Shown here: positions 14,868 through 58,117 of the stretch, piece after piece | Position numbering within the stretch: the stretch's first letter is position 1 | How the letters are laid out: each line of letters starts with the position of its first letter | IMG/VR virus record: IMGVR_UViG_3300028364_000014 | Span: 1-64,000 of that record | DNA: 64,000 nt | Reading direction: 5' to 3' (one strand) | Translations under genes and position numbers: made by a program | The notes under the pieces: model-generated | What the model was told of the DNA's origin: nothing | Database searches by the model: none | What the model saw: only the letters and a program-made list of their open reading frames with translations

Positions 14868-15929
14868 CTATACAACCGATAACCTTTCCTTTATATTATA
14901 TCTTTTATACAAAATTGATTGATACCAATTCTTATGCCAAGTTCTATCTTTATTGGCTTTACTATTACAAGAACGACAGATGGTTATTAAATTACTTGGG
15001 TTACAGTTCTTTTTATCATAATCAATGTGATGAATTGTTAAATCCTTTGGATTTTTAGAATTACAGTACGGATTTAAACATTTATTTCCATCACGATTTC
15101 TTATGTCTTGTTTGTATTCTTTATCCTTCCAGGCTTCACAGTACGGCTCAAAGGTGATACCACCCTTCCAATTATAGTTTTTATCCCCTGATATACTTAT
15201 AAAATAGCAATCAGGGCATCTATGTCCAGACGACCAATCTTTCCAATTTATAGAGTTATAATGCCCTTTAGAACATTTATACTTTAATTTAGTACGTGCA
15301 TTTTTATACTCATTACTCAATAAAATATATTCCTCACTTTCAAAGGATTTTCTTATTTCATATATTGTGGGCATTATTTTAGCCATATAACACTTTGAAC
15401 ACCTAGAGCTATTACGATTCCAATTTTCCCAACTTACTTTGTAAACATGCCCTTTTGGGCATATAGAAATAAGTTTACTATTTCTATTAATATATTTATC
15501 ACTTAATAAAGTATAACCTTCTAACTCAAAAGAAGCTTTTATTTTTTTAAATGATGCCCTCTTTTTACCAGAGCACTCCATACACCTATTACCAAGTAAC
15601 CAATTATTCCAAATAACACTACCTAAATGCCCTTTAGGACAAATATACTTTAATTTACTTTTAGAATTTATATATTTATCAGTTAAAAGTACATAGCCAG
15701 CATCATTAAAAGAGGCTCTCACAAAATCGATAGATAATTTCCTATTACCTACACATTTAGAACATCTTACACCCTTTCTTAAATGATCTATACGCATACT
15801 ACCCTCGTGCCCTTTGTCGCAAACATATTTAAAAGATTGTCTAGAATTAACGTATACGGTTGACACTAAAGTATACTTAATTTCTTGAAACTCTTTTCTA
15901 ACTCTCTCTATTGTTAATTTTGAAGGCAT
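14868..15929 (-). CDS. HNH homing endonuclease, family A (CxKGH zinc-ribbon repeats)
   Basis: Repeated YxCxKGH...W..W....RCxxC units; C-terminal LTIHHIDYDKKNCNPSNLITICRSCN. Confidence 0.85.
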   Translation of the reverse strand: MPSKLTIERVRKEFQEIKYTLVSTVYVNSRQSFKYVCDKGHEGSMRIDHLRKGVRCSKCVGNRKLSIDFVRASFNDAGYVLLTDKYINSKSKLKYICPKGHLGSVIWNNWLLGNRCMECSGKKRASFKKIKASFELEGYTLLSDKYINRNSKLISICPKGHVYKVSWENWNRNSSRCSKCYMAKIMPTIYEIRKSFESEEYILLSNEYKNARTKLKYKCSKGHYNSINWKDWSSGHRCPDCYFISISGDKNYNWKGGITFEPYCEAWKDKEYKQDIRNRDGNKCLNPYCNSKNPKDLTIHHIDYDKKNCNPSNLITICRSCNSKANKDRTWHKNWYQSILYKRYNIKERLSVV

Positions 15930-30828: not shown

Positions 30829-33819
30829 TTATTTAATTCTTTTCTTTAATACCGCGTGGCCTAGTCCGTATTCCAATAGTGGGGGTGCTTGAAAACTTGA
30901 AGTGCCTTGAGATCCTAAATAATCAAAACTAGTCCCTACTCTACTACGCACTAAGCCACTTACACTATGAAGAATAGGACCATCTCCCTCTTCGAGTTCC
31001 CTCTCAACCTGTCTTGCTCCATGGGCTCCTAATATAAGTGCAGAATATAAATCCTTATTCATATGCTTAGTAGGAGTATCGAAATGCAATATACCAGTAG
31101 AAGTTTGAGTAACTACTATATTTAATAACTGTGATTTAAGCGTTATTATATTTATATAAGCCCTAGCTAATAAATCGTTAGTAGAATTAGATGGATTATC
31201 TGGAAATAAAAGACTCTTATCCTCAAACATAGCTTTTGTAGTAAAATTGGCATCAGCTATCCAAGTAGGATTAAAATTAACCATATCTAGTATATGTCTT
31301 CCTTCTAAATGTATATGATCTTGGTTTCCTCTATCAATAATAGGTTCGGTTTCTCCGTAACCCTCCTCTAATAAATCACATACTGCCTTTCCACCTCCGC
31401 CTTTATCCATGAATATTCTAATGATATTATATTGATTACAAAGTTGTTGTACTGATCTTGTAAGTCCTTGTGTGGTCTGCTTTTTAAGTTCTATTACATT
31501 AACTATTTTATTAGGTTTACCTATTTCAATAATAACCACACCACAACTGGCGCTTCCCCCCTGATTAGGGTCAATACCCATTATATACTGTTTATTAGGC
31601 GCTCCATTGAACTGTAAAGTAAAATCATTCCCTAAAGTACAATCATCTAATAGGGATGCCTTAAAAAATCCCTCTGAATCTGAAACCATGGCAGCTTCAT
31701 ATTCCATACTATACTCATGTCTAGACATAATACGTTTAGCTTCAGCAATATTATTATTATCCAAGAACCCCTCAGGTAAGTCCCAATAAGGTACTTGCCA
31801 CACTGCATAATCACAATCCTTACCTTGAGCTTCAGCTTCCGCCACCATCTTCCAATGGTCCCTCATACGTCGCCACATATGATTAAATTTATAATACCCT
31901 GAGGAAGTCATTACCATCTTGTTAACTTTTTCCTCAGCAAAATCATCAGCAGCAGCAAGACCAGCATTAATCAAACGAGTCTGTTCCTCTAGTCTACGAA
32001 CTCTTTCCATCGGTGCCAAAGAGGTTGCTCCCATTGGTCTTACTACCATATCCAAAGTTTGATCTGGAACTTGCGCTAACTCATCCACAAGAATTAGATA
32101 GAAACGTGATCCACGAATTTTACTACCATCTCCTAGTGGTAGTCCCTCAATATATGATGGAGTTTTACCAGCAACCGACTTAAATTTTAAATAAGCTGTG
32201 TCTGAACCACGAGTTGGTTTCTTTGCAGAAGCTTCTCTAAGAATTGAAGATTGATCATATAGTTTCTCTACTTCAGCAAATATCATTTTTGAATTGTGAT
32301 TAATAAACCCGTTAGCCCAATAACAGTGTTCATTTTTTACTTCTATATCTATTGTTTCTGAAAAGAAGTAATCAACCTCTTTAATTTTAACAAAGTATAA
32401 CCCTTGTTCATATAATTTTTTGGCTTTATTGTAATTATCCTTTATTAATTTATTTGTAAGACCAATAGCCCTAGCTAAACTTTCTTCTTGATTAAAATGG
32501 TTATCTATATAAGCATTAAGCTTTTCTTTCTTTCTTAAGCATCTAAATCCAACAGTATCATTGAATCTTTTGATAAAAGTTTGTCCTGTAATCCTAACTT
32601 TATAGGCTTCTGCACATTTAGACGGTTTATTTCCTTGCGATAATTGTCTTATACATGCCTTTTTACTTATACCAAAGTTAGACACTATACCTAAATTTAG
32701 TAGTATAGCCTGCACTTCTTTAGCTAGTTGTTTAGAAGAAGTACTAAAGGCAATTTCAGAACCTTTATTTTTTTGCACATAAAAACACCCATCTGTGTCA
32801 TATAAACCCTGTAAACAAGCTATTAAGTTATCTCGTGAAGCTTTTTTTAAAATACTAGGAATCTTTTTATCCAGAGCTGTTGTTTTAGTAAAACCACACT
32901 CTAATAAATACTGGGCTAGTTGCTTACAAAAGTATTGAATTTCCCAAGTATCATTCCTTCTATTCCTTCTATCTATCTTTTCTTCTTTATCTACACAAAA
33001 ATATCTTCTTAGATTATTCTCAAAAGAGTCTAATAAATCCTGGTCTTCACTTACAAAGTCTACACGCTGTTTTCTTTTATTTTTACTAACAGAAACACAG
33101 CCATCACCTAGTAAAAGACCCATCCAATAAGATAAAGAAGGTGTTAATTCTTTAGGTATTAAACAATTTTTAGTTCTCCAATCATGTTCAAATTCAAATT
33201 CAGGCATCGAGTTATCATTACCAAAATAATTAAATCCTGTTTTTATTGCTATATATTCATCTTTTATATCCTGTAAGTCTTTAAATTCAGTATCTAAATC
33301 ATCGTTTAAACACACAACGGCATGATCTATAGTACCAGACAATTCAAATCCTTTTGTAGTTTTTATATACTTACATGCTTTATCTTTATCTGTCCATTTA
33401 CTGACTACTGTATTATGATTAAAATTTGACTGTACTCTTGTTTTTCCTGGAATTACTTTATTATAAAAATCCTCTGTACCTGTATTTAATCCTTCATTTG
33501 TCCAAAACGTAGCAAGTGTGTCTGATTTTATTAACGATTGTCTAAATACTGGGCCAATTAGACCTACCCTATAACCTGGATACAACAAGCAACTTAATGC
33601 AGCTAAAGTACCGAGCATAAAAGTTTTTCCCACGCCACGTCCACAAATAGCTATGACGTAGTTCTTAAACCACATGTCTCTAAAAACCAATCGCTGAATA
33701 GGTGCTAAATCTACCCCTAGGAGCTCATAAGCGGCTGTACAAGGGTGAGCTCTATAAAACTCTATAAGTTCCTTACCTTGTACCAGCAACGCTTCCATGT
33801 TTTGTCTTTTTTTAGCCAT
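30829..33819 (-). CDS. terL: Terminase large subunit with intein
   Basis: Walker A CGRGVGKT, Walker B LILVDE, nuclease GIDP and IFMDKGGG, KDLYSAL; intein insert after GPVFRQ. Confidence 0.92.
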   Translation of the reverse strand: MAKKRQNMEALLVQGKELIEFYRAHPCTAAYELLGVDLAPIQRLVFRDMWFKNYVIAICGRGVGKTFMLGTLAALSCLLYPGYRVGLIGPVFRQSLIKSDTLATFWTNEGLNTGTEDFYNKVIPGKTRVQSNFNHNTVVSKWTDKDKACKYIKTTKGFELSGTIDHAVVCLNDDLDTEFKDLQDIKDEYIAIKTGFNYFGNDNSMPEFEFEHDWRTKNCLIPKELTPSLSYWMGLLLGDGCVSVSKNKRKQRVDFVSEDQDLLDSFENNLRRYFCVDKEEKIDRRNRRNDTWEIQYFCKQLAQYLLECGFTKTTALDKKIPSILKKASRDNLIACLQGLYDTDGCFYVQKNKGSEIAFSTSSKQLAKEVQAILLNLGIVSNFGISKKACIRQLSQGNKPSKCAEAYKVRITGQTFIKRFNDTVGFRCLRKKEKLNAYIDNHFNQEESLARAIGLTNKLIKDNYNKAKKLYEQGLYFVKIKEVDYFFSETIDIEVKNEHCYWANGFINHNSKMIFAEVEKLYDQSSILREASAKKPTRGSDTAYLKFKSVAGKTPSYIEGLPLGDGSKIRGSRFYLILVDELAQVPDQTLDMVVRPMGATSLAPMERVRRLEEQTRLINAGLAAADDFAEEKVNKMVMTSSGYYKFNHMWRRMRDHWKMVAEAEAQGKDCDYAVWQVPYWDLPEGFLDNNNIAEAKRIMSRHEYSMEYEAAMVSDSEGFFKASLLDDCTLGNDFTLQFNGAPNKQYIMGIDPNQGGSASCGVVIIEIGKPNKIVNVIELKKQTTQGLTRSVQQLCNQYNIIRIFMDKGGGGKAVCDLLEEGYGETEPIIDRGNQDHIHLEGRHILDMVNFNPTWIADANFTTKAMFEDKSLLFPDNPSNSTNDLLARAYINIITLKSQLLNIVVTQTSTGILHFDTPTKHMNKDLYSALILGAHGARQVERELEEGDGPILHSVSGLVRSRVGTSFDYLGSQGTSSFQAPPLLEYGLGHAVLKKRIK
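32293..33537 (-). mobile_element. Intein (415 aa) with LAGLIDADG endonuclease in TerL
   Basis: Starts SLIKSDT, ends YWANGFINHN followed by Ser+1; LLLGDGC and LQGLYDTDG motifs; removal gives GPVFRQ-SKMIF. Confidence 0.9.
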
Positions 33820-38953: not shown

Positions 38954-39994
38954 TTATATTTTATATCTATTATTTAATATAGCCTGATACCAAGACTTAT
39001 GCCACTCTCTATCTTTATTAGCCCTTGAATTACAAGAGCGACATACCGTTATTAAATTACTTGGTTTACAATTCTTTTTATTATAATCTATATGATGGAT
39101 TGTTAGTACCTTGTCCCTATTCCAACAAACAGGATTTAGACACACATTCCCATCACGATCCATAATACCTTGTTTATATTCTTTATCCTTCCATGCTTCA
39201 CAATAAGGGTCAAATGTAATACCACCTCTCCAATTCGGAGTATTTGATCCAAAATAGTTATTAATATAACATGTAGAGCATCTATTACCTTGACTAAAAT
39301 TATTCCAAGTCACATAATTAGTATGTCCATTATCACATATGTATTTTAATTTCTGTTTTCCATTTCTATATTCAGTAGACAGTAAAGTATATCCTACTTT
39401 ACTAAACTCATCTTTTATATACTCTACATTGTGTCTAACTTTACCAGAGCACACTGAGCACCTATTACCGTTACTCCAATTTGCCCAAGTAATATTTCTA
39501 ATATGACCTTTGGGGCATTTAACTTTTAAATTAGAAAAAGCATTTTTATATTTATTTAATAGCACATAACCCTCTGACGCTAGTAACTCAAACACATCAT
39601 CAGTAGTTAACTTGGCATTATTACTACATATAGCACATCTACTATTTTTAGAACTCCAAGCATCCCAAGAAGTACTATACTTATGACCATTTGGACATAT
39701 ATAATCTAATTTTTCAGAACAATTTATATATTCAGAGGTTAATAAAACATACCCCTCGTCAGCAAAGGCTTTCCTTATACTCTCGATTGTTCTTCTTCTT
39801 ACTCTACCATTAGGATTACAATAAGAACATCTTCTTCCAGTTTGCCATTTATTCCACGATATTTTATATTTATGCCCTTTAGGACAAATATATTCTAACA
39901 ACGTAGCTGAGTTTGTATAACTAGTAGCTAATAATTTATATCCTTCAGACTCAAAAGAACTTTTTACATATTCTATAGTAAGCTTTTTAGACAT
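38954..39994 (-). CDS. HNH homing endonuclease, family A
   Basis: CPKGH/CPNGH/CDNGH repeats; LTIHHIDYNKKNCKPSNLITVCRSCN. Confidence 0.85.
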   Translation of the reverse strand: MSKKLTIEYVKSSFESEGYKLLATSYTNSATLLEYICPKGHKYKISWNKWQTGRRCSYCNPNGRVRRRTIESIRKAFADEGYVLLTSEYINCSEKLDYICPNGHKYSTSWDAWSSKNSRCAICSNNAKLTTDDVFELLASEGYVLLNKYKNAFSNLKVKCPKGHIRNITWANWSNGNRCSVCSGKVRHNVEYIKDEFSKVGYTLLSTEYRNGKQKLKYICDNGHTNYVTWNNFSQGNRCSTCYINNYFGSNTPNWRGGITFDPYCEAWKDKEYKQGIMDRDGNVCLNPVCWNRDKVLTIHHIDYNKKNCKPSNLITVCRSCNSRANKDREWHKSWYQAILNNRYKI

Positions 39995-47060: not shown

Positions 47061-47624
47061 TCATCGAATTGAGAATGTCAAATCCTTATTAAAAGTGTTT
47101 AATATTATAGAAGTTACTTTATTTATAGTTTTTAAGCCTGGTTCTAAATTTATATAATTGATTTTATGTTGATCTAAGACAGATTTAATTATACCATCGA
47201 TATCTATTGCCTCTGCTTTAGATTGCTTTCTACCAAATTTTTCATACTTAATTGAATTATTTCTCGTCAAATATATATTTAAATTATTATATGAGTTGTA
47301 TACACTCATAATATAGTCCTCAAACTCCTTAGTTAGGGTGTTCCTTTGATAAACTAAAGAAAGCAGTAGTGACGTATCAGTAACTACTACAGCCGCTTTA
47401 TTCTCTATTCTAGCGAGTCGTCTATTTTGTTCCCCAAACACTGAACCTTGCATACTAAGTGCTTTCCAATTTTCTTCAAAGGTTAATTCTTTAGGGTATT
47501 CAGTCACTAGTTCACAATCTATATAGTGTAATTTTAGTAATGAAAATATTCCTGAGGCGGACGCTGATTTTAGACTGCCAGGTCCTCCTAGGAAATTTAT
47601 TATTAGTGGTTTTTTAATACTCAA
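47061..47624 (-). CDS. NadR-like P-loop kinase (AAA_28 type)
   Basis: INFLGGPGSLKS, VTEYPKEL, VVTDTSLL, YEKFGRKQ. Confidence 0.75.
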   Translation of the reverse strand: MSIKKPLIINFLGGPGSLKSASASGIFSLLKLHYIDCELVTEYPKELTFEENWKALSMQGSVFGEQNRRLARIENKAAVVVTDTSLLLSLVYQRNTLTKEFEDYIMSVYNSYNNLNIYLTRNNSIKYEKFGRKQSKAEAIDIDGIIKSVLDQHKINYINLEPGLKTINKVTSIILNTFNKDLTFSIR

Positions 47625-48189
47625 ATTCTTTATCCTTTTTACTATTCATAAAAATGGCTAATTGTTCTTTAGTATTATTTCCATACCCAAAATATTTATG
47701 GAATTTTATATGGCATTTTTCACACAGGGTTATACCATTGTCAACATTTAATCTATACTTAGGATAAGCTGAATAAGACATTATGTGATGAGCCACTAAA
47801 TTACCACCTTTATCATCATTACATTTTTTACAATTGTAATTATCTTTTTTATACACCTTAAGTCGCCAATCTATATAATCTGTATAATCCCTGTTACGTA
47901 TTCTATCTTCATCAGATAAGTTTGGGTTATACCTATAGCTGCTTTTGCCACTGTTTGCTTTAGATATTATTAATTTATGTGCTTTGGACATTGACTTACC
48001 ATACCTTGGGTTATTATCTCCTAAATTTGCACAACGCTTACTGCAAAAAGTATTTTTCTTACTTTTTATTCTTAAAAATGTTTCTTTACAAAGGGGACAA
48101 ATATCTATTACGTAAATATCCGACCCCTTTCTAAAAGTGCCTCTAGTAGTTAAGTATACATTCTCTAAATTATCCCAACAAATAATCAT
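47614..48189 (-). CDS. HNH endonuclease with NUMOD3
   Basis: KDNYNCKKC...LVAHHIMS...NGITLCEKCH. Confidence 0.85.
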   Translation of the reverse strand: MIICWDNLENVYLTTRGTFRKGSDIYVIDICPLCKETFLRIKSKKNTFCSKRCANLGDNNPRYGKSMSKAHKLIISKANSGKSSYRYNPNLSDEDRIRNRDYTDYIDWRLKVYKKDNYNCKKCNDDKGGNLVAHHIMSYSAYPKYRLNVDNGITLCEKCHIKFHKYFGYGNNTKEQLAIFMNSKKDKEFEY

Positions 48190-48192
48190 TTA

Positions 48193-49533
48193 TTACCCTA
48201 TTGTTTTATCTTGTAGTAAATCAGCTATTTCTAATATATCACTTCTATATGAGTTCTGTAATTCAACATAAGCTATAGATCTGTGTGGTAGAACTCTAAG
48301 TAATTTTAATAGACCTGATTCTGATGGCTTAACTACGTTATATGTTTGTTTTAAATCACCAAGTAGTATCAACCTACCAGAAGCCGATGGACGACTTAGA
48401 ATCATGCTCATATAGTCTACAGTAATAAGTTGAACTTCATCTACGATTAGTGTGTCGTTATCTAGAAGAGATAGTCCTTGAATTGAATTTAAAGATATAG
48501 GCTCAAACTTTTCTTTAAAAATTATATCTTTAACGTAATCATAGCGTTTCTTTATGTCTTGACCTCTAGTATTTGAATAGATATAATATAGAGCGCTCAT
48601 AAAACCAGCAAGCCAGTCTTGCATTTTATCCATTTTATCCCCAGGAAGAAATCCCAACTCATACTTAGAATTAATTCCTATAGGTGCTCTCGACACAAAC
48701 ACTTTTTTATCTCGATCTTTAGCTAATGCCGCTGCTGAAGCCAGCAAAGTCTTACCAGAGCCCCATCTGCCGGTGATTAAGCAATGAGGGGCTTCTTTGA
48801 GTGCAAATATAGCGCATACTTGATAAGCATCTCTTGCTTTTACAGTAGTTTGTTCTACTTTTATTTCCCTATATTCAGGATTATCATCTATTTTAATAAA
48901 TACTTTTTTTATGGGATTATGTGCATATATAATCGTGTTAGGGGTAGGATTTTTAATAAATACAAAAAACCAGGAGTTTTCATCTAATGATTTTTCACTG
49001 GATCTTTCAAATAAATCAAATGTGTTTGAATAATCATTACCGTTTGGGTCATCACTAATGTATCTCCCATAACCAAATACACCTTCTTCACAATTCCAAT
49101 AAAGAGCGTCTTGTTCAATGTAAACATAAGGATTAAATAAATTATTTAACACAACATCAAAAAGCTTTACCATCACTCCTTGAGATTCAGCGATTATTGA
49201 CATTGACATATCTTTTGTAGCCAGTACTGCTCCGTGTTTTTTTGCGGAAGCTATAATAGCTTGATCATTATTGAACGTGCCATTAAACGCCTCAGTGTCA
49301 AATTCTATCTTATCTGGAAATTCTTTTTTAAAGTCTATAATAGCTCTTATAGCCTCTCTCGCACTATAAGAAGTGTCTGGTTTAAATTTATGTTTATCTA
49401 GTTCTTGTAATACAGTAATAGGCAGAATTAACTTTATATATTCTTTTGAAAGTTTAAATAAGATTTTTGAGTCATCAAGTAATAAGTTAGTATCAATAAC
49501 TACTTTAGTGTTGTTTTTTATTGACTTAAGCAT
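48193..49533 (-). CDS. phoH: PIN-PhoH protein
   Basis: N-terminal PIN VIDTNLLL, VLQELD, NNDQAI, LATKD; PhoH GRWGSGKT, LGFLPGD, LIVDEVQ, LLGDLKQ. Confidence 0.9.
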   Translation of the reverse strand: MLKSIKNNTKVVIDTNLLLDDSKILFKLSKEYIKLILPITVLQELDKHKFKPDTSYSAREAIRAIIDFKKEFPDKIEFDTEAFNGTFNNDQAIIASAKKHGAVLATKDMSMSIIAESQGVMVKLFDVVLNNLFNPYVYIEQDALYWNCEEGVFGYGRYISDDPNGNDYSNTFDLFERSSEKSLDENSWFFVFIKNPTPNTIIYAHNPIKKVFIKIDDNPEYREIKVEQTTVKARDAYQVCAIFALKEAPHCLITGRWGSGKTLLASAAALAKDRDKKVFVSRAPIGINSKYELGFLPGDKMDKMQDWLAGFMSALYYIYSNTRGQDIKKRYDYVKDIIFKEKFEPISLNSIQGLSLLDNDTLIVDEVQLITVDYMSMILSRPSASGRLILLGDLKQTYNVVKPSESGLLKLLRVLPHRSIAYVELQNSYRSDILEIADLLQDKTIG

Positions 49534-49925
49534 AAATAAGTCTCCTTATTGTGTATTGGGATTTATTTTGAAAAAACATAGGTTAGTTAAATACACTAAC
49601 ACTTTTTATGAACAAAACTGGGAAGGGGTTTTATAAAATCATTGGCATACTCTAGCTCCTAGTAAATATATATTGTAAGAAGGTAAGAGGCTAACCTCCT
49701 TAATAATAAGAAGGTTAGTTAAAGCTAGATTATAGAGAGATGTATTAATAATTTCATCGATATTACAGTGGGGGACACTGTTGAAGTTTGTTGTTAGTAT
49801 TATGGCTACAGATTTTTTTATCAGTTCGGCCTTTAGGCCGTAAAACCCAATGCTTTAGCTTTGGGATATAAGCCTTTGCTTTAGCAGTTTTTGTTAGATA
49901 TGATTCATTTACCGCAACAAGGATA

Positions 49926-51413
49926 TTAGTAAGTCACCAAGCCGCAATTGTTTGTCAATTTACGACAACGTTTAATGCCAAAAGTATCTAATTTTTTTGG
50001 ATTAAGAATGTTCTCAAAAGTAATAACCTCACCTTTGTTTTGCACGCCTTTACAAACTTGTATCATTGATTCTACGTTGACAACATCACCTTTTCGGATC
50101 TTGTAGTCAGTGATTAAACTTCTCATTACTTTTTTTCCTGGGATTGCAACTATAACTGTTGAGTTAAGCTTCCCCTCAACCATGAGAGATTGTTTTAATT
50201 CGGTAAGACTCTTTTTCTTAGGGTCTTGTCCTGCCCGTCGTTTACGATTCCAGGCTACTATCTTTTTCTTTTTTTCCGGTATTGAGTCAAAAATCATATA
50301 TCTACGATCCGTAGATCTTAACGTAAATGACCGGGTGTGCCTAGGAAATTGTCTCATATTCAACTCAGAATTATAATCTTTCCAAGAGTAATCTTGTAAA
50401 TCCTGATTTCCTAAACTGTCGTTGAATGCAATGAGGCTTGCATCACTGGCATGAGATTTAATAATATTGTCTCGATTCCTAACGCCACTCGTAATATATC
50501 CGTAAGTGTCTTGAATTGGACATTTGTCTTCAAATTCATTCCAGATCGTTTTCATGACTGAATTTAAAACTCCAGCATCACGGTATCCGTTTACAGAAGT
50601 AGATTCCTTTGGACATTTTAATCCATTTTTGTGAACTTTGTTATGACAATTTTCACACAGCAATATTAAATTTTCAGGTCGATCTGAACCACCATTACTC
50701 TTCCAAGTGATATGATGAACTTCGTTTCTAATTTTACCAACATCTTTTTTACAGATTTGACATTGGTAATTGTCTCTATTCCTTACATAACTTTTTACGT
50801 TTTCAAAACCAAATTGTAATCCTTTTTGATACCAAAAAGATTGGACCTTTGGAGTAATCATCTTGTGGATATCAAATTTATTATACTCTAAATGAATTTT
50901 AACTTGTTCAATTGGAACCAACTTTAATAACTTTGCCAATACATTTCTATGCGATTGGATCAAATGAAGATGAGTAACTTGAAACTTATGTTTACTTCGA
51001 TTTTTCCAAATAGGGTGCTTGAACTTAGCATTTCCAGCCCCATACTTTTTTTTGATACCTTTTCGAGCCAGATATCTTCGACTGCGGCGATACATTCTTT
51101 TGGCATCAAGCCCTTCTTTGATCTTTGCTGTGCGTAGGTATACCTCTCCGTTAATAAGTTTAGTAATAACATCCCTTTGGATTTTAAATACTGCAAACCC
51201 AATGTTCGCATATCCAGGATCAATACCTATTCTAAACTCACAATTAATTGTTTCACTTTTATAAAATACTTTTGTTAATAATTGAACAATAATTACGTCT
51301 TTGTTTAATCGTTTTATAACTTTAGCTTTCTTGTTTCGAATCAACCTTCCCACCATATCGTGTTTTTTGGTAGGGTGGCCGATATTGTTTCTTGCGTCTA
51401 CAATGTAAATCAT
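49926..51413 (-). CDS. iscB: IscB RNA-guided endonuclease
   Basis: PLMP-like N-terminus (GHPT), RuvC-I GIDPG, Arg-rich RRSRR bridge helix, RuvC-II HLEYNKFD, HNH EVHH...PENLILLCENCH, RuvC-III SHASDA. Confidence 0.92.
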   Translation of the reverse strand: MIYIVDARNNIGHPTKKHDMVGRLIRNKKAKVIKRLNKDVIIVQLLTKVFYKSETINCEFRIGIDPGYANIGFAVFKIQRDVITKLINGEVYLRTAKIKEGLDAKRMYRRSRRYLARKGIKKKYGAGNAKFKHPIWKNRSKHKFQVTHLHLIQSHRNVLAKLLKLVPIEQVKIHLEYNKFDIHKMITPKVQSFWYQKGLQFGFENVKSYVRNRDNYQCQICKKDVGKIRNEVHHITWKSNGGSDRPENLILLCENCHNKVHKNGLKCPKESTSVNGYRDAGVLNSVMKTIWNEFEDKCPIQDTYGYITSGVRNRDNIIKSHASDASLIAFNDSLGNQDLQDYSWKDYNSELNMRQFPRHTRSFTLRSTDRRYMIFDSIPEKKKKIVAWNRKRRAGQDPKKKSLTELKQSLMVEGKLNSTVIVAIPGKKVMRSLITDYKIRKGDVVNVESMIQVCKGVQNKGEVITFENILNPKKLDTFGIKRCRKLTNNCGLVTY

Positions 51414-51419
51414 CTTTTC

Positions 51420-51675
51420 CCCTCTTAATAAATACCCATTGATCGGGCAAACTAAGAATAGTTCGGTTCGTCTCCCCCGACTTAATCAAAAGTAATACTG
51501 ATCTTCGTTACCTACTAATCAGCAATGAGGACTTGTAATGCTCCGCTTACCTCCATTGCTACGGACTGGGAGTGGCATCCGTAGGTGAACTCTCGATTAA
51601 ACGTCTGTTCAATCCTGAATTAAATCAGCTTGCTGTTGATTGCAAGCCCAAGTCCTTTAGGCTTGGGTAATTGAC
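51420..51675 (-). ncRNA. omegaRNA/HEARO-type scaffold of IscB
   Basis: About 255-nt structured noncoding region between the left end and iscB, with CACCTACGGATGCCACTCCCAGTCCGTAGC and GTCGGGGGAGAC elements typical of HEARO/omegaRNA. Confidence 0.8.
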
Positions 51676-51841
51676 TATTATTTTGTAAGTATGTGTTAAT
51701 GATGGTTGATTGGTCATCAGAAGATAGGTTATTAAATAATTCGTTACACATAATTAAGCAATCTGTTGGTGACACATCAATTGTTAAATTAAACTTTGCT
51801 CCGCTTGTTTCTAAGGTAGTTTCAAAAAATTTCTTACTCAT
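51620..51841 (-). CDS. Small gene whose 3' end is interrupted by the IscB element
   Basis: GGAGG RBS; the last 18 codons (SQLPKPKGLG...) come from the element left end. Confidence 0.55.
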   Translation of the reverse strand: MSKKFFETTLETSGAKFNLTIDVSPTDCLIMCNELFNNLSSDDQSTIINTYLQNNSQLPKPKGLGLAINSKLI

Positions 51842-51848
51842 AGTCCTC

Positions 51849-52340
51849 CTAAATTCTAAAATATTTTTCTAAGATGTGACACGCCTCTTCTTCAGTACGT
51901 ACCCAACAATTAACCACACTTTTAACAAACGGATGGTTGCATTTGGCATCTTTGGTAGGGTCTCCGTCCAAGATCCCTATTACGGCTTTATGGTTATTAT
52001 CGTGATACCATGCCAATTCAAAAAAAGTACCTATCATGTCTTTGGCTGTGTCATAATGATTCATATTTGCTATAGCCCCTGTAGACTTCATAACATACAT
52101 CTTGTCTTTAGGAACTAGTAGGTTAATCCCTTCAGTGGTATACACCTTAGTTCTATCTGGATCAGATCCGTCGCTGTATTCTTTTTGTACTGATTTATTA
52201 AATTCATTTTTGCATGGGTCAATGAAATAAAACTGTCTATCACCGTTAAAATGGTTTTTTACTCTTTTTCTCCAGTTATAAGTTTCTGGCTCATTAACGC
52301 TGATTTGTCCAATTAAATAAATCTTATCTCTCATAACCAT
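51849..52340 (-). CDS. Nucleoside 2-deoxyribosyltransferase-like protein
   Basis: KIYLIGQI..WRKRV..FIDP..D...GTFFELAW pattern. Confidence 0.65.
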   Translation of the reverse strand: MVMRDKIYLIGQISVNEPETYNWRKRVKNHFNGDRQFYFIDPCKNEFNKSVQKEYSDGSDPDRTKVYTTEGINLLVPKDKMYVMKSTGAIANMNHYDTAKDMIGTFFELAWYHDNNHKAVIGILDGDPTKDAKCNHPFVKSVVNCWVRTEEEACHILEKYFRI

Positions 52341-52478
52341 AATTCCTTGTTTCTAAGTGTGTTTTTAAAAAAGCTATTTCATTTTCAATGGTGATTTTTT
52401 CTTTTCCTTTTGTAACATCTAATATTGTATTTAATAAATTAAGTTTTTTTATTAAATTATCATTCTGTAATTTTTTTT

Positions 52479-52733
52479 TCATAATATTAAATCTTCCTCA
52501 GTGTAAACATCTCCGTTTAGTTCAATCTTACTATTTTCATAATTTTCTATGACTCGTCTATAGAATTCTAGTTTAGCTCCTTCACATGCACCTATTATAT
52601 CATTAAATGTTGAATAACACTTACCGTTGTGTCTCATATACTTAAGTAATAACTCTGTTATCATAAAATTTAATTCTCCCGATGTTTCTGGAGTAGTTAT
52701 GTCGTTTCTTCTAAATTGTTCAATATATGGCAT
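52479..52733 (-). CDS. Conserved phage hypothetical protein (MPYI...GELNF...KLEFYRR...NGDVY)
   Basis: Motif pattern familiar from phage genomes; function unknown. Confidence 0.6.
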   Translation of the reverse strand: MPYIEQFRRNDITTPETSGELNFMITELLLKYMRHNGKCYSTFNDIIGACEGAKLEFYRRVIENYENSKIELNGDVYTEEDLIL

Positions 52734-52745
52734 TATATCTCCTTT

Positions 52746-52934
52746 TTATCCAACACTGATGTTTTTATATAACCAACTATCGTAATGTTTTCTAATACTT
52801 TTGGCATATTCATGTTTGTCTTTAAACTCTTCTCTTTTGTATATTGATTTGTCTATTAAAAACTTTATTTCCTCGTCTACAAACTTTTCATCTAAGTCTG
52901 TTTCAGGTATTACAAAGAAATCGCTATATTTCAT
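52746..52934 (-). CDS. Hypothetical protein (62 aa)
   Basis: ORF with RBS. Confidence 0.5.
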   Translation of the reverse strand: MKYSDFFVIPETDLDEKFVDEEIKFLIDKSIYKREEFKDKHEYAKSIRKHYDSWLYKNISVG

Positions 52935-52986
52935 TTTAAGTTTTCTCCTGATAGTGTTTAAATTTACTTATTAAAACATAGTGTTA

Positions 52987-53304
52987 TTATCCCTTTTTTA
53001 AACTATCTATATAGAGCATCTGTCTAGCTATAGTAGACATCAGCATTACTTCAATTATATCTGAAGCCACTTCCTCTGTCGTGGTGTTGAATTTAGTTGC
53101 AGTAGTTTTAACTCCCGGATCTATTAACAATTCATTTTCTACTGATTGTATGTACTCCATTACTTCGTATGTTTTTTCTGTTAGTTTTGGCAAGTCAATT
53201 TGATCCTCGAAAGTAGGGTCACTTTGGTAAAGTTTGGACAAGGTTTGCCCAAGGTTGTTCATAATTTCTTGTTTCTCTATAAAATCTGATAATTTACTCG
53301 TCAT
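52987..53304 (-). CDS. Hypothetical protein (105 aa)
   Basis: ORF with RBS. Confidence 0.55.
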   Translation of the reverse strand: MTSKLSDFIEKQEIMNNLGQTLSKLYQSDPTFEDQIDLPKLTEKTYEVMEYIQSVENELLIDPGVKTTATKFNTTTEEVASDIIEVMLMSTIARQMLYIDSLKKG

Positions 53305-56989: not shown

Positions 56990-58117
56990 TTACGAATTAT
57001 TTAGTAAATAAGCTTTACATATTATGTATAATTCCTTTTCTGTATAATGACCTAATCCCGCATTAAACACCCAAATAACCAATCTACAGTTTTCAGGTGT
57101 ATATCCCTTACTAACATCAATTCTATCAATACTTGGTCCGAATGGGTTTCTCTGAAGAGTGGTATCGTAGTCGAATGGTAATTCAGTGACCTCACATAAA
57201 TTTGACTCTGTCTTCTCGTTTAACCATTTTCTAGTTATACTGTGATCCATATTTTTTTCTTTCGCGCGGACTTTTGAGTACACAAACAACCGTCTTAGTT
57301 TAAACTCCTTAGGGTTTTCTGTCCTTAGTTTTTCTAATCGTTCTTTCTGGTCTCTACTATAGTCATTAGGCGTCTTATAGTTGGCTATTCGCTCTAATCT
57401 CTTACGTTCTTTTTCTAGCTCTCTAATTTCTTTTAATTTCTTACGTTTTAATACTAGTAAAGCTTGCCGCTCTTTCTTTTCTTTCTTTTTTATTATTTTA
57501 CTAAGGTAAAGTTCTTTTTCCCTTATTGCTTCTCTTTCTTCTATTATAAATTGCTCTATAGGTATATTTTTCTTATACCACAGATTAGTAAGTCTCCTTA
57601 GTTCTCGATAGAGTAGTGTTTGGTGTTCAGTACAACAATAGAAGGTACTGATTATTTTTTTACTGTTATGTCCTTGTACGAAGCACTTAACTTTAGTAGC
57701 TGTGTTAATACTAGGGGTAAACCACTCATGGCAATAAGCACATTTTATTTCTAAATAGTCTCTATCTAGTACTGCTCTTCTTATCTCATAATATGGAGCT
57801 AGTATTTCATACCTCTCGTATAATGGATGTATTTGACCTTTATCAATCAATTCGAAGTATCTCTTGTTTTTAATTACCTTAGCTTCCTCTACTTCTTCCC
57901 AATCTTTAAGTTCTTCCTCTGATGGTTTATACTTATGTTTACACTTGGCACCACAGAATAATGACTGGTGTTGATTTGAAGTTAAATACGGCTCGCCACA
58001 GTTCTTGCATGCATCCTTATATATATAGGAGCACCCTTTTCTCCTAAAGAACCCGTTCCTACTAAGTGTCATTTGATCCAGTTTTTCATAACACAATCTC
58101 ATTGTTATCCTCCTCAT
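56990..58117 (-). CDS. Endonuclease-like protein: Zn modules, coiled coil, C-terminal His-Me/HNH-like domain
   Basis: CKNC, CAYC modules; CEVTELPF...PSIDRIDVSKGYTPENCRLV. Confidence 0.7.
   Translation of the reverse strand: MRRITMRLCYEKLDQMTLSRNGFFRRKGCSYIYKDACKNCGEPYLTSNQHQSLFCGAKCKHKYKPSEEELKDWEEVEEAKVIKNKRYFELIDKGQIHPLYERYEILAPYYEIRRAVLDRDYLEIKCAYCHEWFTPSINTATKVKCFVQGHNSKKIISTFYCCTEHQTLLYRELRRLTNLWYKKNIPIEQFIIEEREAIREKELYLSKIIKKKEKKERQALLVLKRKKLKEIRELEKERKRLERIANYKTPNDYSRDQKERLEKLRTENPKEFKLRRLFVYSKVRAKEKNMDHSITRKWLNEKTESNLCEVTELPFDYDTTLQRNPFGPSIDRIDVSKGYTPENCRLVIWVFNAGLGHYTEKELYIICKAYLLNNS

What the first reader, a model, noticed from the sequence alone, without database searches (positions are those of the whole stretch)
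49822..51700. Phage-borne IscB-omegaRNA element with a reconstructable insertion site and predicted TAM
Seen: intact 495-aa IscB, about 255-nt structured leader, matching end hairpins, no TnpA. The left end interrupts a small gene at ...CAA AAT AAT A|GTCAA. After the right hairpin comes ...GAACTG|ATAAAA. Joining the flanks gives an in-frame ending QNNNKKICSHNTNNKLQQCPPL*. Known: IscB guides derive from the 5' flank and the TAM from the 3' flank; ATAAA is a reported IscB TAM. Inference: guide ends ...CATACTTACAAAATAATA, TAM ATAAA, so the element could cut element-free alleles of co-infecting relatives (RNA-guided homing).
Basis: partly seen in the sequence, partly recalled or inferred. Interest (0 to 1): 0.6.

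Follow-up and report, generated by a model that had tools for sequence, protein, structure and literature searches.

The report
Mobile IscB guide-RNA element in jumbo phage
A 1,854-base selfish DNA element encoding an RNA-guided nuclease (IscB, the ancestor of Cas9) sits in a gene of a large lake phage, and a near-identical phage lacking it shows exactly where it went in, making this a natural case for testing whether such elements spread between co-infecting phages by cutting the empty site.

Summary
Window 49822-51675 (minus strand) is a 1,854-bp non-autonomous IS200/IS605-type element. It carries an intact 495-aa IscB (RRXRR + HNH, catalytic residues kept, full-length fold match to solved IscB) behind a 262-nt omegaRNA (HEARO, E 1.6e-7, 22 covarying pairs).

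A contig from an independent salt-lake metagenome joins 49821 directly to 51676.

The window is part of a 238-kb jumbo phage. That phage also holds a second full copy (83% nt), a roughly 125-bp miniature, and two empty sites that are occupied in population variants. All six 3' flanks begin ATAAA, which is TTTAT before the left end in IS convention. ATAAA is the TAM reported for KraIscB-1 and OrufIscB.

IscB is under strong purifying selection (dN/dS 0.07). No TnpA occurs in the phage or its relatives, and two more distant relatives lack IscB altogether.

The predicted guide plus TAM exist only on the empty allele, so the geometry for RNA-guided homing is complete. Expression, cleavage and homing remain untested. 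This is a new member of a known kind in an unusual, informative setting.

The parts
49822..51675 (-). Whole mobile element, 1,854 bp (non-autonomous IS200/IS605-type, ISC-like)
   Evidence: The empty-allele contig joins 49821 to 51676 with no ambiguity. Similarity to the second copy begins and ends at these bases.
49926..51413 (-). iscB, 495 aa, intact
   Evidence: Pfam RRXRR + HNH. phmmer matches to solved IscB chains 7utn/7xht at E 8e-22, with RuvC D65, E176, H321/D324 and the HNH H233-H234...N248...H257 conserved. AF2 model pLDDT 84; Foldseek top hit 8csz_D IscB, E 1.4e-26, across the full length. dN/dS 0.07 against copy 2.
51414..51675 (-). omegaRNA scaffold (HEARO-type), 262 nt, ending at the iscB start codon
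   Evidence: Rfam RF02033 hit 51675-51492, E 1.6e-7, with model position 1 at 51675. RNAalifold on 6 relatives gives 56 pairs, 22 with compensatory changes. It is 91.5% identical to copy 2 although dS is 1.3.
51676..51691 (-). Predicted guide (16 nt of flank immediately 5' of the scaffold: TACTTACAAAATAATA). The length is inferred from OgeuIscB.
   Evidence: Position follows from the HEARO model start. The sequence is unique in the 238-kb genome and is nowhere followed by ATAAA there. Guide length comes from PMC13180657. Expression not tested.
49817..49821 (-). Predicted TAM ATAAA (TTTAT on the + strand, directly 5' of the IS left end)
   Evidence: The same pentamer follows all six insertion sites. 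Other metagenome contigs share ATAA to ATAAAAAAA beyond the element end.
49827..49865 (+). Left-end (IS convention) subterminal hairpins: CGGCC-TTTA-GGCCG and CCCAATGC-TTTA-GCTTTGGG
   Evidence: DNA fold -10.8 kcal/mol, z -2.96. Conserved in copy 2 and in the miniature.
51648..51675 (+). Right-end hairpin (51648-51666) plus a 9-nt tail GTAATTGAC. Its complement forms the first stem of the omegaRNA.
   Evidence: DNA fold, z -2.66. A compensatory G/C to A/T change is seen in copy 2.
51676..51841 (-). 5' part of the interrupted small phage gene. It is read as a 73-aa fusion running into the element (stop at 51620).
   Evidence: ORF list. Homologues of 60-71 aa lie at the same place in three related phages that lack the element.
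49763..49821 (-). Displaced 3' end of the small gene (codons ...NKKICSHNTNNKLQQCPPL*)
   Evidence: Translation of the joined flanks. The join is seen physically in the X7 contig.

Best explanation
Window 49822-51675 is a non-autonomous IS200/IS605-family element of the IscB type, inserted into the 3' end of a small gene of a 238-kb jumbo phage. It lies in the same orientation as that gene and immediately 3' of the top-strand motif TTTAT.

Shown:
- Exact boundaries, and seamless presence/absence polymorphism between near-identical phages.
- An intact, selected IscB with all catalytic residues.
- A conserved, covarying omegaRNA that abuts the flank.
- Several insertion sites, all next to ATAAA.
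- No TnpA in the phage.

Inferred:
- Read-through transcription from the phage gene yields an omegaRNA whose 5' ~16 nt (…TACTTACAAAATAATA) come from the flank.
- IscB-omegaRNA recognises that sequence only where it is followed by ATAAA. That is true on the element-free allele. On the occupied allele it is followed by GTCAAT.
- The resulting double-strand break is repaired from an occupied genome in the same cell, either a co-infecting phage or a sister replicon after excision. This converts empty alleles to occupied ones.
- Moves to new TTTAT sites need a Y1 TnpA supplied in trans, by the host or another element.
For: - Boundaries and empty allele: (joint 49821->51676, both = 0).
- IscB identity and integrity.
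- omegaRNA.
- Second copy in the same genome (G000:89743-91605, 83% nt). It also sits in the 3' end of a gene, in the same orientation.
- Purifying selection: dN/dS 0.07 at dS 1.3, while the non-coding ends stay 92% identical.
- ATAAA at six of six sites: copy 1, copy 2, the miniature at G000 ~143.5 kb, the L045-type site in a relative, and the G000:151857 and G000:118206 sites, which are empty in this genome and occupied in variants. Background frequency is 0.005.
- Guide unique, with no self-target.
- No TnpA in the phage or in three related records. Two more distant relatives (189 and 144 kb) lack IscB.
- Literature: omegaRNA bounded by the RE, TAM shared by TnpA and IscB, same-orientation bias, and only ~1.5% of iscB genes lying next to tnpA (Meers et al.). 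ATAAA TAMs. Homing into co-infecting phages or plasmids is proposed for OMEGA systems (PMC13565253).
- Other homing elements: the phage also carries an intein-LAGLIDADG in its terminase and several free-standing HNH genes. This is indirect evidence that homing elements persist in it.
Against: - No RNA data exist for this virus, so omegaRNA expression and its 5' end are unknown.
- The promoter scan is no better than chance.
- The HEARO score is below Rfam's gathering threshold.
- The empty allele is one assembled contig in one run. It cannot tell a never-occupied site from a TnpA excision product.
- No co-conversion tract could be examined.
- The source of transposase is unidentified.
- The TAM is inferred from insertion sites, which report TnpA's preference directly and IscB's only by the known coupling of the two.
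Confidence: 0.78

Rival explanations
1. Ordinary transposon housekeeping only. [quoted passage not shown] Horizontal homing into other phages would then play no meaningful part.
For: This is the experimentally shown role of IscB/TnpB (Meers et al.). Multiple new sites next to TTTAT require transposition. The empty allele could be an excision product.
Against: No TnpA is present in this phage or its relatives. Without excision there is nothing to restore during a lytic cycle unless the host supplies TnpA. Empty and occupied alleles coexist in near-identical phages across samples, which is the substrate for horizontal homing. The two roles use the same reaction and do not exclude each other.
Confidence: 0.12
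2. A phage weapon. The IscB RNP is kept because it destroys competing relatives that lack the insertion (marker exclusion or killing), and copying of the element is incidental.
For: Strong purifying selection on IscB. The genome is dense in nucleases of the homing type. Killing of competitors by homing endonucleases is described for phages (PMC13565253).
Against: The guide is simply whatever flank the element landed in, as in any IS. Nothing suggests a fixed, exapted guide. Insertion disrupts phage gene ends. Sites are polymorphic rather than fixed.
Confidence: 0.06
3. Decaying relic, or artefact of assembly. On this reading the IscB is inactive and the 'empty site' is a chimeric contig.
For: The HEARO score is below the gathering cut-off. 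The PLMP motif is diverged (IGHP). There is only a single empty-site contig. One related contig (L048) does carry mismatched flanks, which may be a chimera.
Against: The ORF is intact in at least four diverged copies, with dN/dS 0.07-0.10 and all catalytic residues kept. The omegaRNA covaries. The joint shares no bases between its two sides, so a k-mer assembler has nothing to jump on, and its depth equals that of the flanks. Two further empty/occupied pairs exist.
Confidence: 0.04

Closest known systems
IscB-omegaRNA (OMEGA) elements of the IS200/IS605 superfamily, e.g. KraIscB-1, OgeuIscB, OrufIscB, GstIscB (ISC2-type, non-autonomous)
   Same: The domain order and fold are shared. So are the HEARO-type omegaRNA directly upstream, with its first stem formed by the IS right end, and the guide taken from the flank. 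The TAM lies on the far side of the element and equals the TnpA target motif. Insertion is seamless, without duplication. tnpA is usually absent. The element sits in the same orientation as the upstream gene. The ATAAA TAM matches that of KraIscB-1 and OrufIscB.
   Different: Only 23-31% identical to any solved or GenBank-phage IscB. It belongs to a clade of about 55 metagenomic proteins, and every longer contig examined from that clade is phage-like. The element resides in a lytic-looking jumbo phage rather than a bacterial chromosome. Activity is untested.
Free-standing and intron/intein homing endonuclease genes of T4-like phages (SegF, SegB, I-TevI, mobE)
   Same: Presence/absence polymorphism between closely related phages. 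The predicted break falls only on the allele lacking the element, and repair would use the co-infecting donor. Such elements coexist in this same genome.
   Different: Target recognition here would be by an RNA guide plus a 5-nt motif, not by protein. The element can also transpose to new sites, re-programming its own target automatically.
Phage-borne TnpB/TldR (e.g. cyanophage A-1(L) tnpB; TldR of temperate phages)
   Same: An OMEGA-family gene carried on a phage genome.
   Different: Those are TnpB (Cas12-like) or nuclease-dead regulators. This one is a nuclease-competent IscB with transposon ends and polymorphic sites.

Membership tests
IscB (OMEGA RNA-guided nuclease) | Split RuvC with inserted HNH, catalytic residues present | tested here: met
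   Pfam RRXRR 1-174/174 and HNH. Aligned to OgeuIscB at GIDPG (D65), LEYNKFD (E176), HH..N..H (H233/H234, N248, H257) and H321/D324. D65, E176, H233, H234, N248, H257 and H321 are invariant and D324 nearly invariant (90% or more) in 45 homologues.
IscB (OMEGA RNA-guided nuclease) | Full-length IscB architecture including the N-terminal PLMP domain and C-terminal TAM-interacting domain, with no REC lobe | tested here: met
   AF2 model pLDDT 84.1, pTM 0.72. Foldseek hits 8csz_D, 9liq_A and 7utn_D at E 1e-26 to 5e-20, TM about 0.6 over the whole length. The PLMP tetrapeptide itself reads IGHP (diverged).
IscB (OMEGA RNA-guided nuclease) | HEARO/omegaRNA immediately upstream on the same strand | tested here: met
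   RF02033 E 1.6e-7, full model 1-211, but 46.5 bits against a gathering score of 83. The same match occurs in copy 2 and relatives. 22 of 56 pairs show compensatory changes.
IscB (OMEGA RNA-guided nuclease) | Guide- and TAM-dependent dsDNA cleavage | not testable with these tools
   No biochemical data and no RNA runs.
IS200/IS605 superfamily element | Subterminal hairpins at both ends, no terminal inverted repeats, no target duplication | tested here: met
   Hairpins folded. The joint has no duplicated or shared base.
IS200/IS605 superfamily element | Insertion immediately 3' of a conserved penta-nucleotide (TAM) on the top strand | tested here: met
   TTTAT (ATAAA in IscB orientation) at six of six sites.
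IS200/IS605 superfamily element | Y1 (HUH) TnpA transposase | tested here: not met
   No PF01797 match in the 238-kb phage or three related records. The element is therefore non-autonomous, like most iscB loci (about 98.5% per Meers et al.). The trans-acting TnpA is unidentified.
IStron (group I intron fused to an IS200/IS605 element) | Group I intron ribozyme flanking the IS | tested here: not met
   An Rfam scan of 48500-53000 at E <= 1 gives HEARO only.

The most novel reading that the evidence does not exclude
In jumbo phages of saline lakes that encode no transposase, IscB-omegaRNA elements behave as self-reprogramming, RNA-guided homing genes. They form a natural gene drive that spreads between co-infecting phage genomes at several polymorphic sites, and they leave miniature and omegaRNA-only remnants. 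This would be the first natural population evidence for 'non-restorative' OMEGA homing, which so far has been proposed in theory and shown for plasmids.
Probability: 0.45. Interest if true: 0.75.

Novelty: new member of a known kind. Interest (0 to 1): 0.55.

Why it matters
The biological role of IscB has been shown only in bacteria and with TnpA present. Horizontal, TnpA-independent homing is proposed for phages but has not been documented in nature.

This phage population offers exact occupied and empty alleles at three or more sites, each with its own predictable guide and a common ATAAA motif. A handful of defined constructs could therefore test RNA-guided homing directly.

It also adds a compact, clearly selected IscB with a simple A/T-rich TAM from a clade with no characterised member. 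And it shows that many phage 'HNH endonuclease' annotations may hide IscB-type RNA-guided nucleases.

Tried and rejected
- Megablast of the region against GenBank phages: no match.
- Exact-pattern scans of IMG/VR for the joined flanks of copy 1 and copy 2: nothing.
- A 15-mer from the element's 3' end in IMG/VR: 25 hits, but all except the identical contig were chance matches.
- A 22-mer scan of the JGI metagenome contigs: only sites already known.
- A single-protein search of IMG/VR with IscB: only the identical contig.
- Three related phages (70-74% nt) lack the element, but they are too diverged at the gene's 3' end to fix the junction. The junction came from metagenome contigs instead.
- The sigma-70 promoter scan is uninformative: 14 found against 12.4 expected.
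- IStron or intron reading: rejected.
- Relic reading: rejected.
- Contig L048 joins the 5' flank of the G000:151857 site to the 3' flank of the L045 site. I treat it as a possible assembly chimera or recombinant and did not build on it. The proper 3' junction of that site comes from a separate X8 contig.

No complex prediction was run. No alternative genetic code was used.

Full report
**What is there**

The window is the first 64 kb of a 237,910-bp IMG/VR virus record (33% G+C, CheckV 87% complete). It is a tailed phage. It encodes a portal and a large terminase that carries an intein with a LAGLIDADG endonuclease. It also encodes PhoH and several free-standing HNH endonucleases.

On the minus strand, 49926..51413 is an uninterrupted 495-codon ORF. 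It matches Pfam RRXRR over the whole profile (9e-28) and HNH (9e-12). It aligns to solved IscB chains (7utn, 7xht, 9liq; E about 1e-22). The RuvC aspartate in GIDPG, the RuvC glutamate, the HH...N...H of the HNH domain and the RuvC-III H..D are all present. D65, E176, H233, H234, N248, H257 and H321 are invariant and D324 nearly invariant in 45 homologues.

An AlphaFold2 model (pLDDT 84, pTM 0.72) has solved IscB-omegaRNA-DNA complexes as its best PDB matches. The top hit is 8csz_D, E 1.4e-26, aligned end to end. IsrB and small Cas9s follow.

The 262 nt between the ORF and 51675 match Rfam HEARO, the family now known to be the IscB omegaRNA. The match has E 1.6e-7 and covers the full model. 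Model position 1 falls on the G of GTCAA at 51675. The score (46.5 bits) is below Rfam's gathering cut-off of 83. A consensus fold of this leader with five relatives gives 56 pairs, 22 of them with compensatory changes.

**Boundaries and the empty site**

Three related phages in IMG/VR (70-74% nt) have the neighbouring 163-aa gene, a homologue of the small interrupted gene, and PhoH, but nothing between them. They are too diverged to fix the junction.

The decisive result came from laying contigs of four salt-lake metagenomes on 49000-52600. In run X7 a 486-bp contig (depth about 6, like its flanks) lies on 49681-49821 and continues directly at 51676-52020. The tool reports 'skips 1854', no letters between, and no base that could belong to either side.

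The element is therefore exactly 49822-51675, inserted without duplication or loss. The joined flanks restore the ending ...YLQNNNKKICSHNTNNKLQQCPPL*.

In the convention of Meers et al. the omegaRNA end is the IS right end and the TAM lies 5' of the left end. On the window's plus strand the element reads TTTAT|LE(49822)...RE(51675). Both ends carry subterminal hairpins, and the second LE hairpin resembles the RE hairpin.

**More copies, more sites, one motif**

- The same genome holds a second full copy at G000:89743-91605 (83% nt). Its 496-aa IscB is open and it has its own HEARO match.
- That copy also sits in the 3' end of a gene (309 aa), in the same orientation. The joined flanks restore ...HFELYNKNNENKDL*.
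- A roughly 125-bp miniature with both end hairpins and no ORF lies beside a tRNA-Pro at about G000:143.5 kb.
- An 85%-identical IscB element sits in a relative, after another small ORF that is restored when the flanks are joined (L045 and nine more contigs).
- G000:151857 reads GAAGCT|ATAAAATAAT... It is empty here. It is occupied in contig L048, whose 5' flank is 99.7% identical to G000. An X8 contig supplies the matching 3' junction.
- G000:118206 reads ...CTCTGAT|ATAAATCC. It too is empty here. In runs X7-X9 it carries a 341-nt remnant made of the omegaRNA plus the first ~79 nt of iscB. This last reconstruction rests on short loose ends and is only probable.

All six 3' flanks start ATAAA. 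That pentamer occurs at about 0.005 per position in this genome. Further metagenome contigs end their match with the element exactly at 51675, or 4-10 bases beyond 49822 within ATAAAAAAA.

**Is it functional?**

- Between copies 1 and 2, dN/dS is 0.07 at dS 1.3.
- The omegaRNA and the 3' end remain 92% identical, so they are more constrained than silent sites.
- The 16 nt upstream of the scaffold occur once in the genome and are nowhere followed by ATAAA there. On the occupied allele they are followed by GTCAAT.
- ATAAA is the TAM reported for KraIscB-1 and the optimal TAM of OrufIscB. OgeuIscB works best with 16-nt guides.

**Mechanism**

Shown: a seamless, polymorphic, multi-copy IS200/IS605-type insertion, an intact selected IscB, and an omegaRNA that abuts the flank.

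Inferred: transcription reading through from the phage gene makes an omegaRNA with a flank-derived guide. The same-orientation bias is known for iscB. The RNP cuts only the empty allele (target + ATAAA), and recombination with an occupied genome copies the element in.

No Y1 transposase is found in this phage or three related records. Two more distant relatives (189 kb and 144 kb) lack IscB. New sites therefore need a TnpA in trans. During a lytic infection, spread without TnpA would be by homing.

Such 'non-restorative' homing into co-infecting phages or plasmids is proposed for OMEGA systems, and TnpB-dependent, TnpA-independent spread of IS605 among plasmids is reported (PMC13565253). I found no report of it in a natural phage population.

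**What is known and what is new**

IscB-omegaRNA elements, their TAM logic and their role in transposon retention are established, so the kind is known. The new points are these:

- A clade of about 55 metagenomic IscBs (at least 40% identical to this one). Every longer contig examined from it is phage-like.
- It has no close relative among 50,697 GenBank phage records. Only 19 of those records hold any IscB homologue, all below 35% identity and labelled HNH endonuclease or hypothetical.
- A natural set of occupied and empty alleles.

**Limits**

- No RNA run holds this virus.
- The empty allele is one assembled contig.
- The TAM is inferred from insertion sites.
- The promoter scan is uninformative.
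- The transposase source is unknown.
- Contig L048 has mismatched flanks and may be chimeric.

Noticed in passing
G000:89743-91605 (+), outside the window (L002:1504-3366): Second full IscB-omegaRNA copy (83% nt; 496-aa IscB, 84% aa). It is inserted in the 3' end of a 309-aa gene, in inverted orientation relative to copy 1, about 38 kb away. Recombination between the two could invert the segment between them.
   Followed up: yes
G000: about 143,535-143,660 (-), L003 about 1490-1615, next to tRNA-Pro: Miniature element of roughly 125 bp with degenerate versions of both end hairpins and no ORF, followed by ATAAAAAT. It looks like a PATE/MITE-like derivative of the same family.
   Followed up: partly
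G000:151857 (empty) vs L048:2733 (occupied): This genome has an unoccupied target, GAATATGAAGCT+ATAAAA. A 99.7%-identical variant carries an IscB element there, whose first base reads A instead of G. L048's 3' flank belongs to a different insertion site, so L048 is either a chimera or a recombinant. The proper 3' junction appears in an X8 contig.
   Followed up: partly
G000:118206/118207 (empty); contigs of runs X7, X8, X9: Variants carry a 341-nt remnant here, made of the omegaRNA plus the first ~79 nt of iscB. It ends directly at ATAAAT. How a deletion ending exactly at the TAM arose is unexplained.
   Followed up: partly
window 30829-33819 (-): The large terminase subunit (996 aa) is interrupted by an intein with a LAGLIDADG homing endonuclease (Pfam Intein_splicing, LAGLIDADG_3).
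   Followed up: partly
window 14868-15929, 38954-39994, 47614-48189, 56990-58117 (all -): Four free-standing HNH-type endonuclease genes; the first two are paralogues. The genome is rich in homing-type nucleases.
   Followed up: no
run X8, loose end at window 49818: The element's left-end hairpin plus ATAA is joined to a GC-rich flank (GGCGATCAGCTTGCC...), unlike the 33% G+C phage. The same ends may therefore also reside in a bacterial genome, a possible host and TnpA source.
   Followed up: no
G000:148798-149476 vs L048:353: A 680-bp stretch present in this genome is absent from the near-identical contig L048. The stretch is bounded by GTGGG(T/C)GGTT repeats.
   Followed up: no
window 51620-51675 and L002:1504-1559: The 5' end of the omegaRNA is open in the host gene's frame. 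Each interrupted gene therefore ends in the same tail, (S/C)QLPKPKG(L/F)GLA(I/V)N(S/R)KLI*.
   Followed up: no
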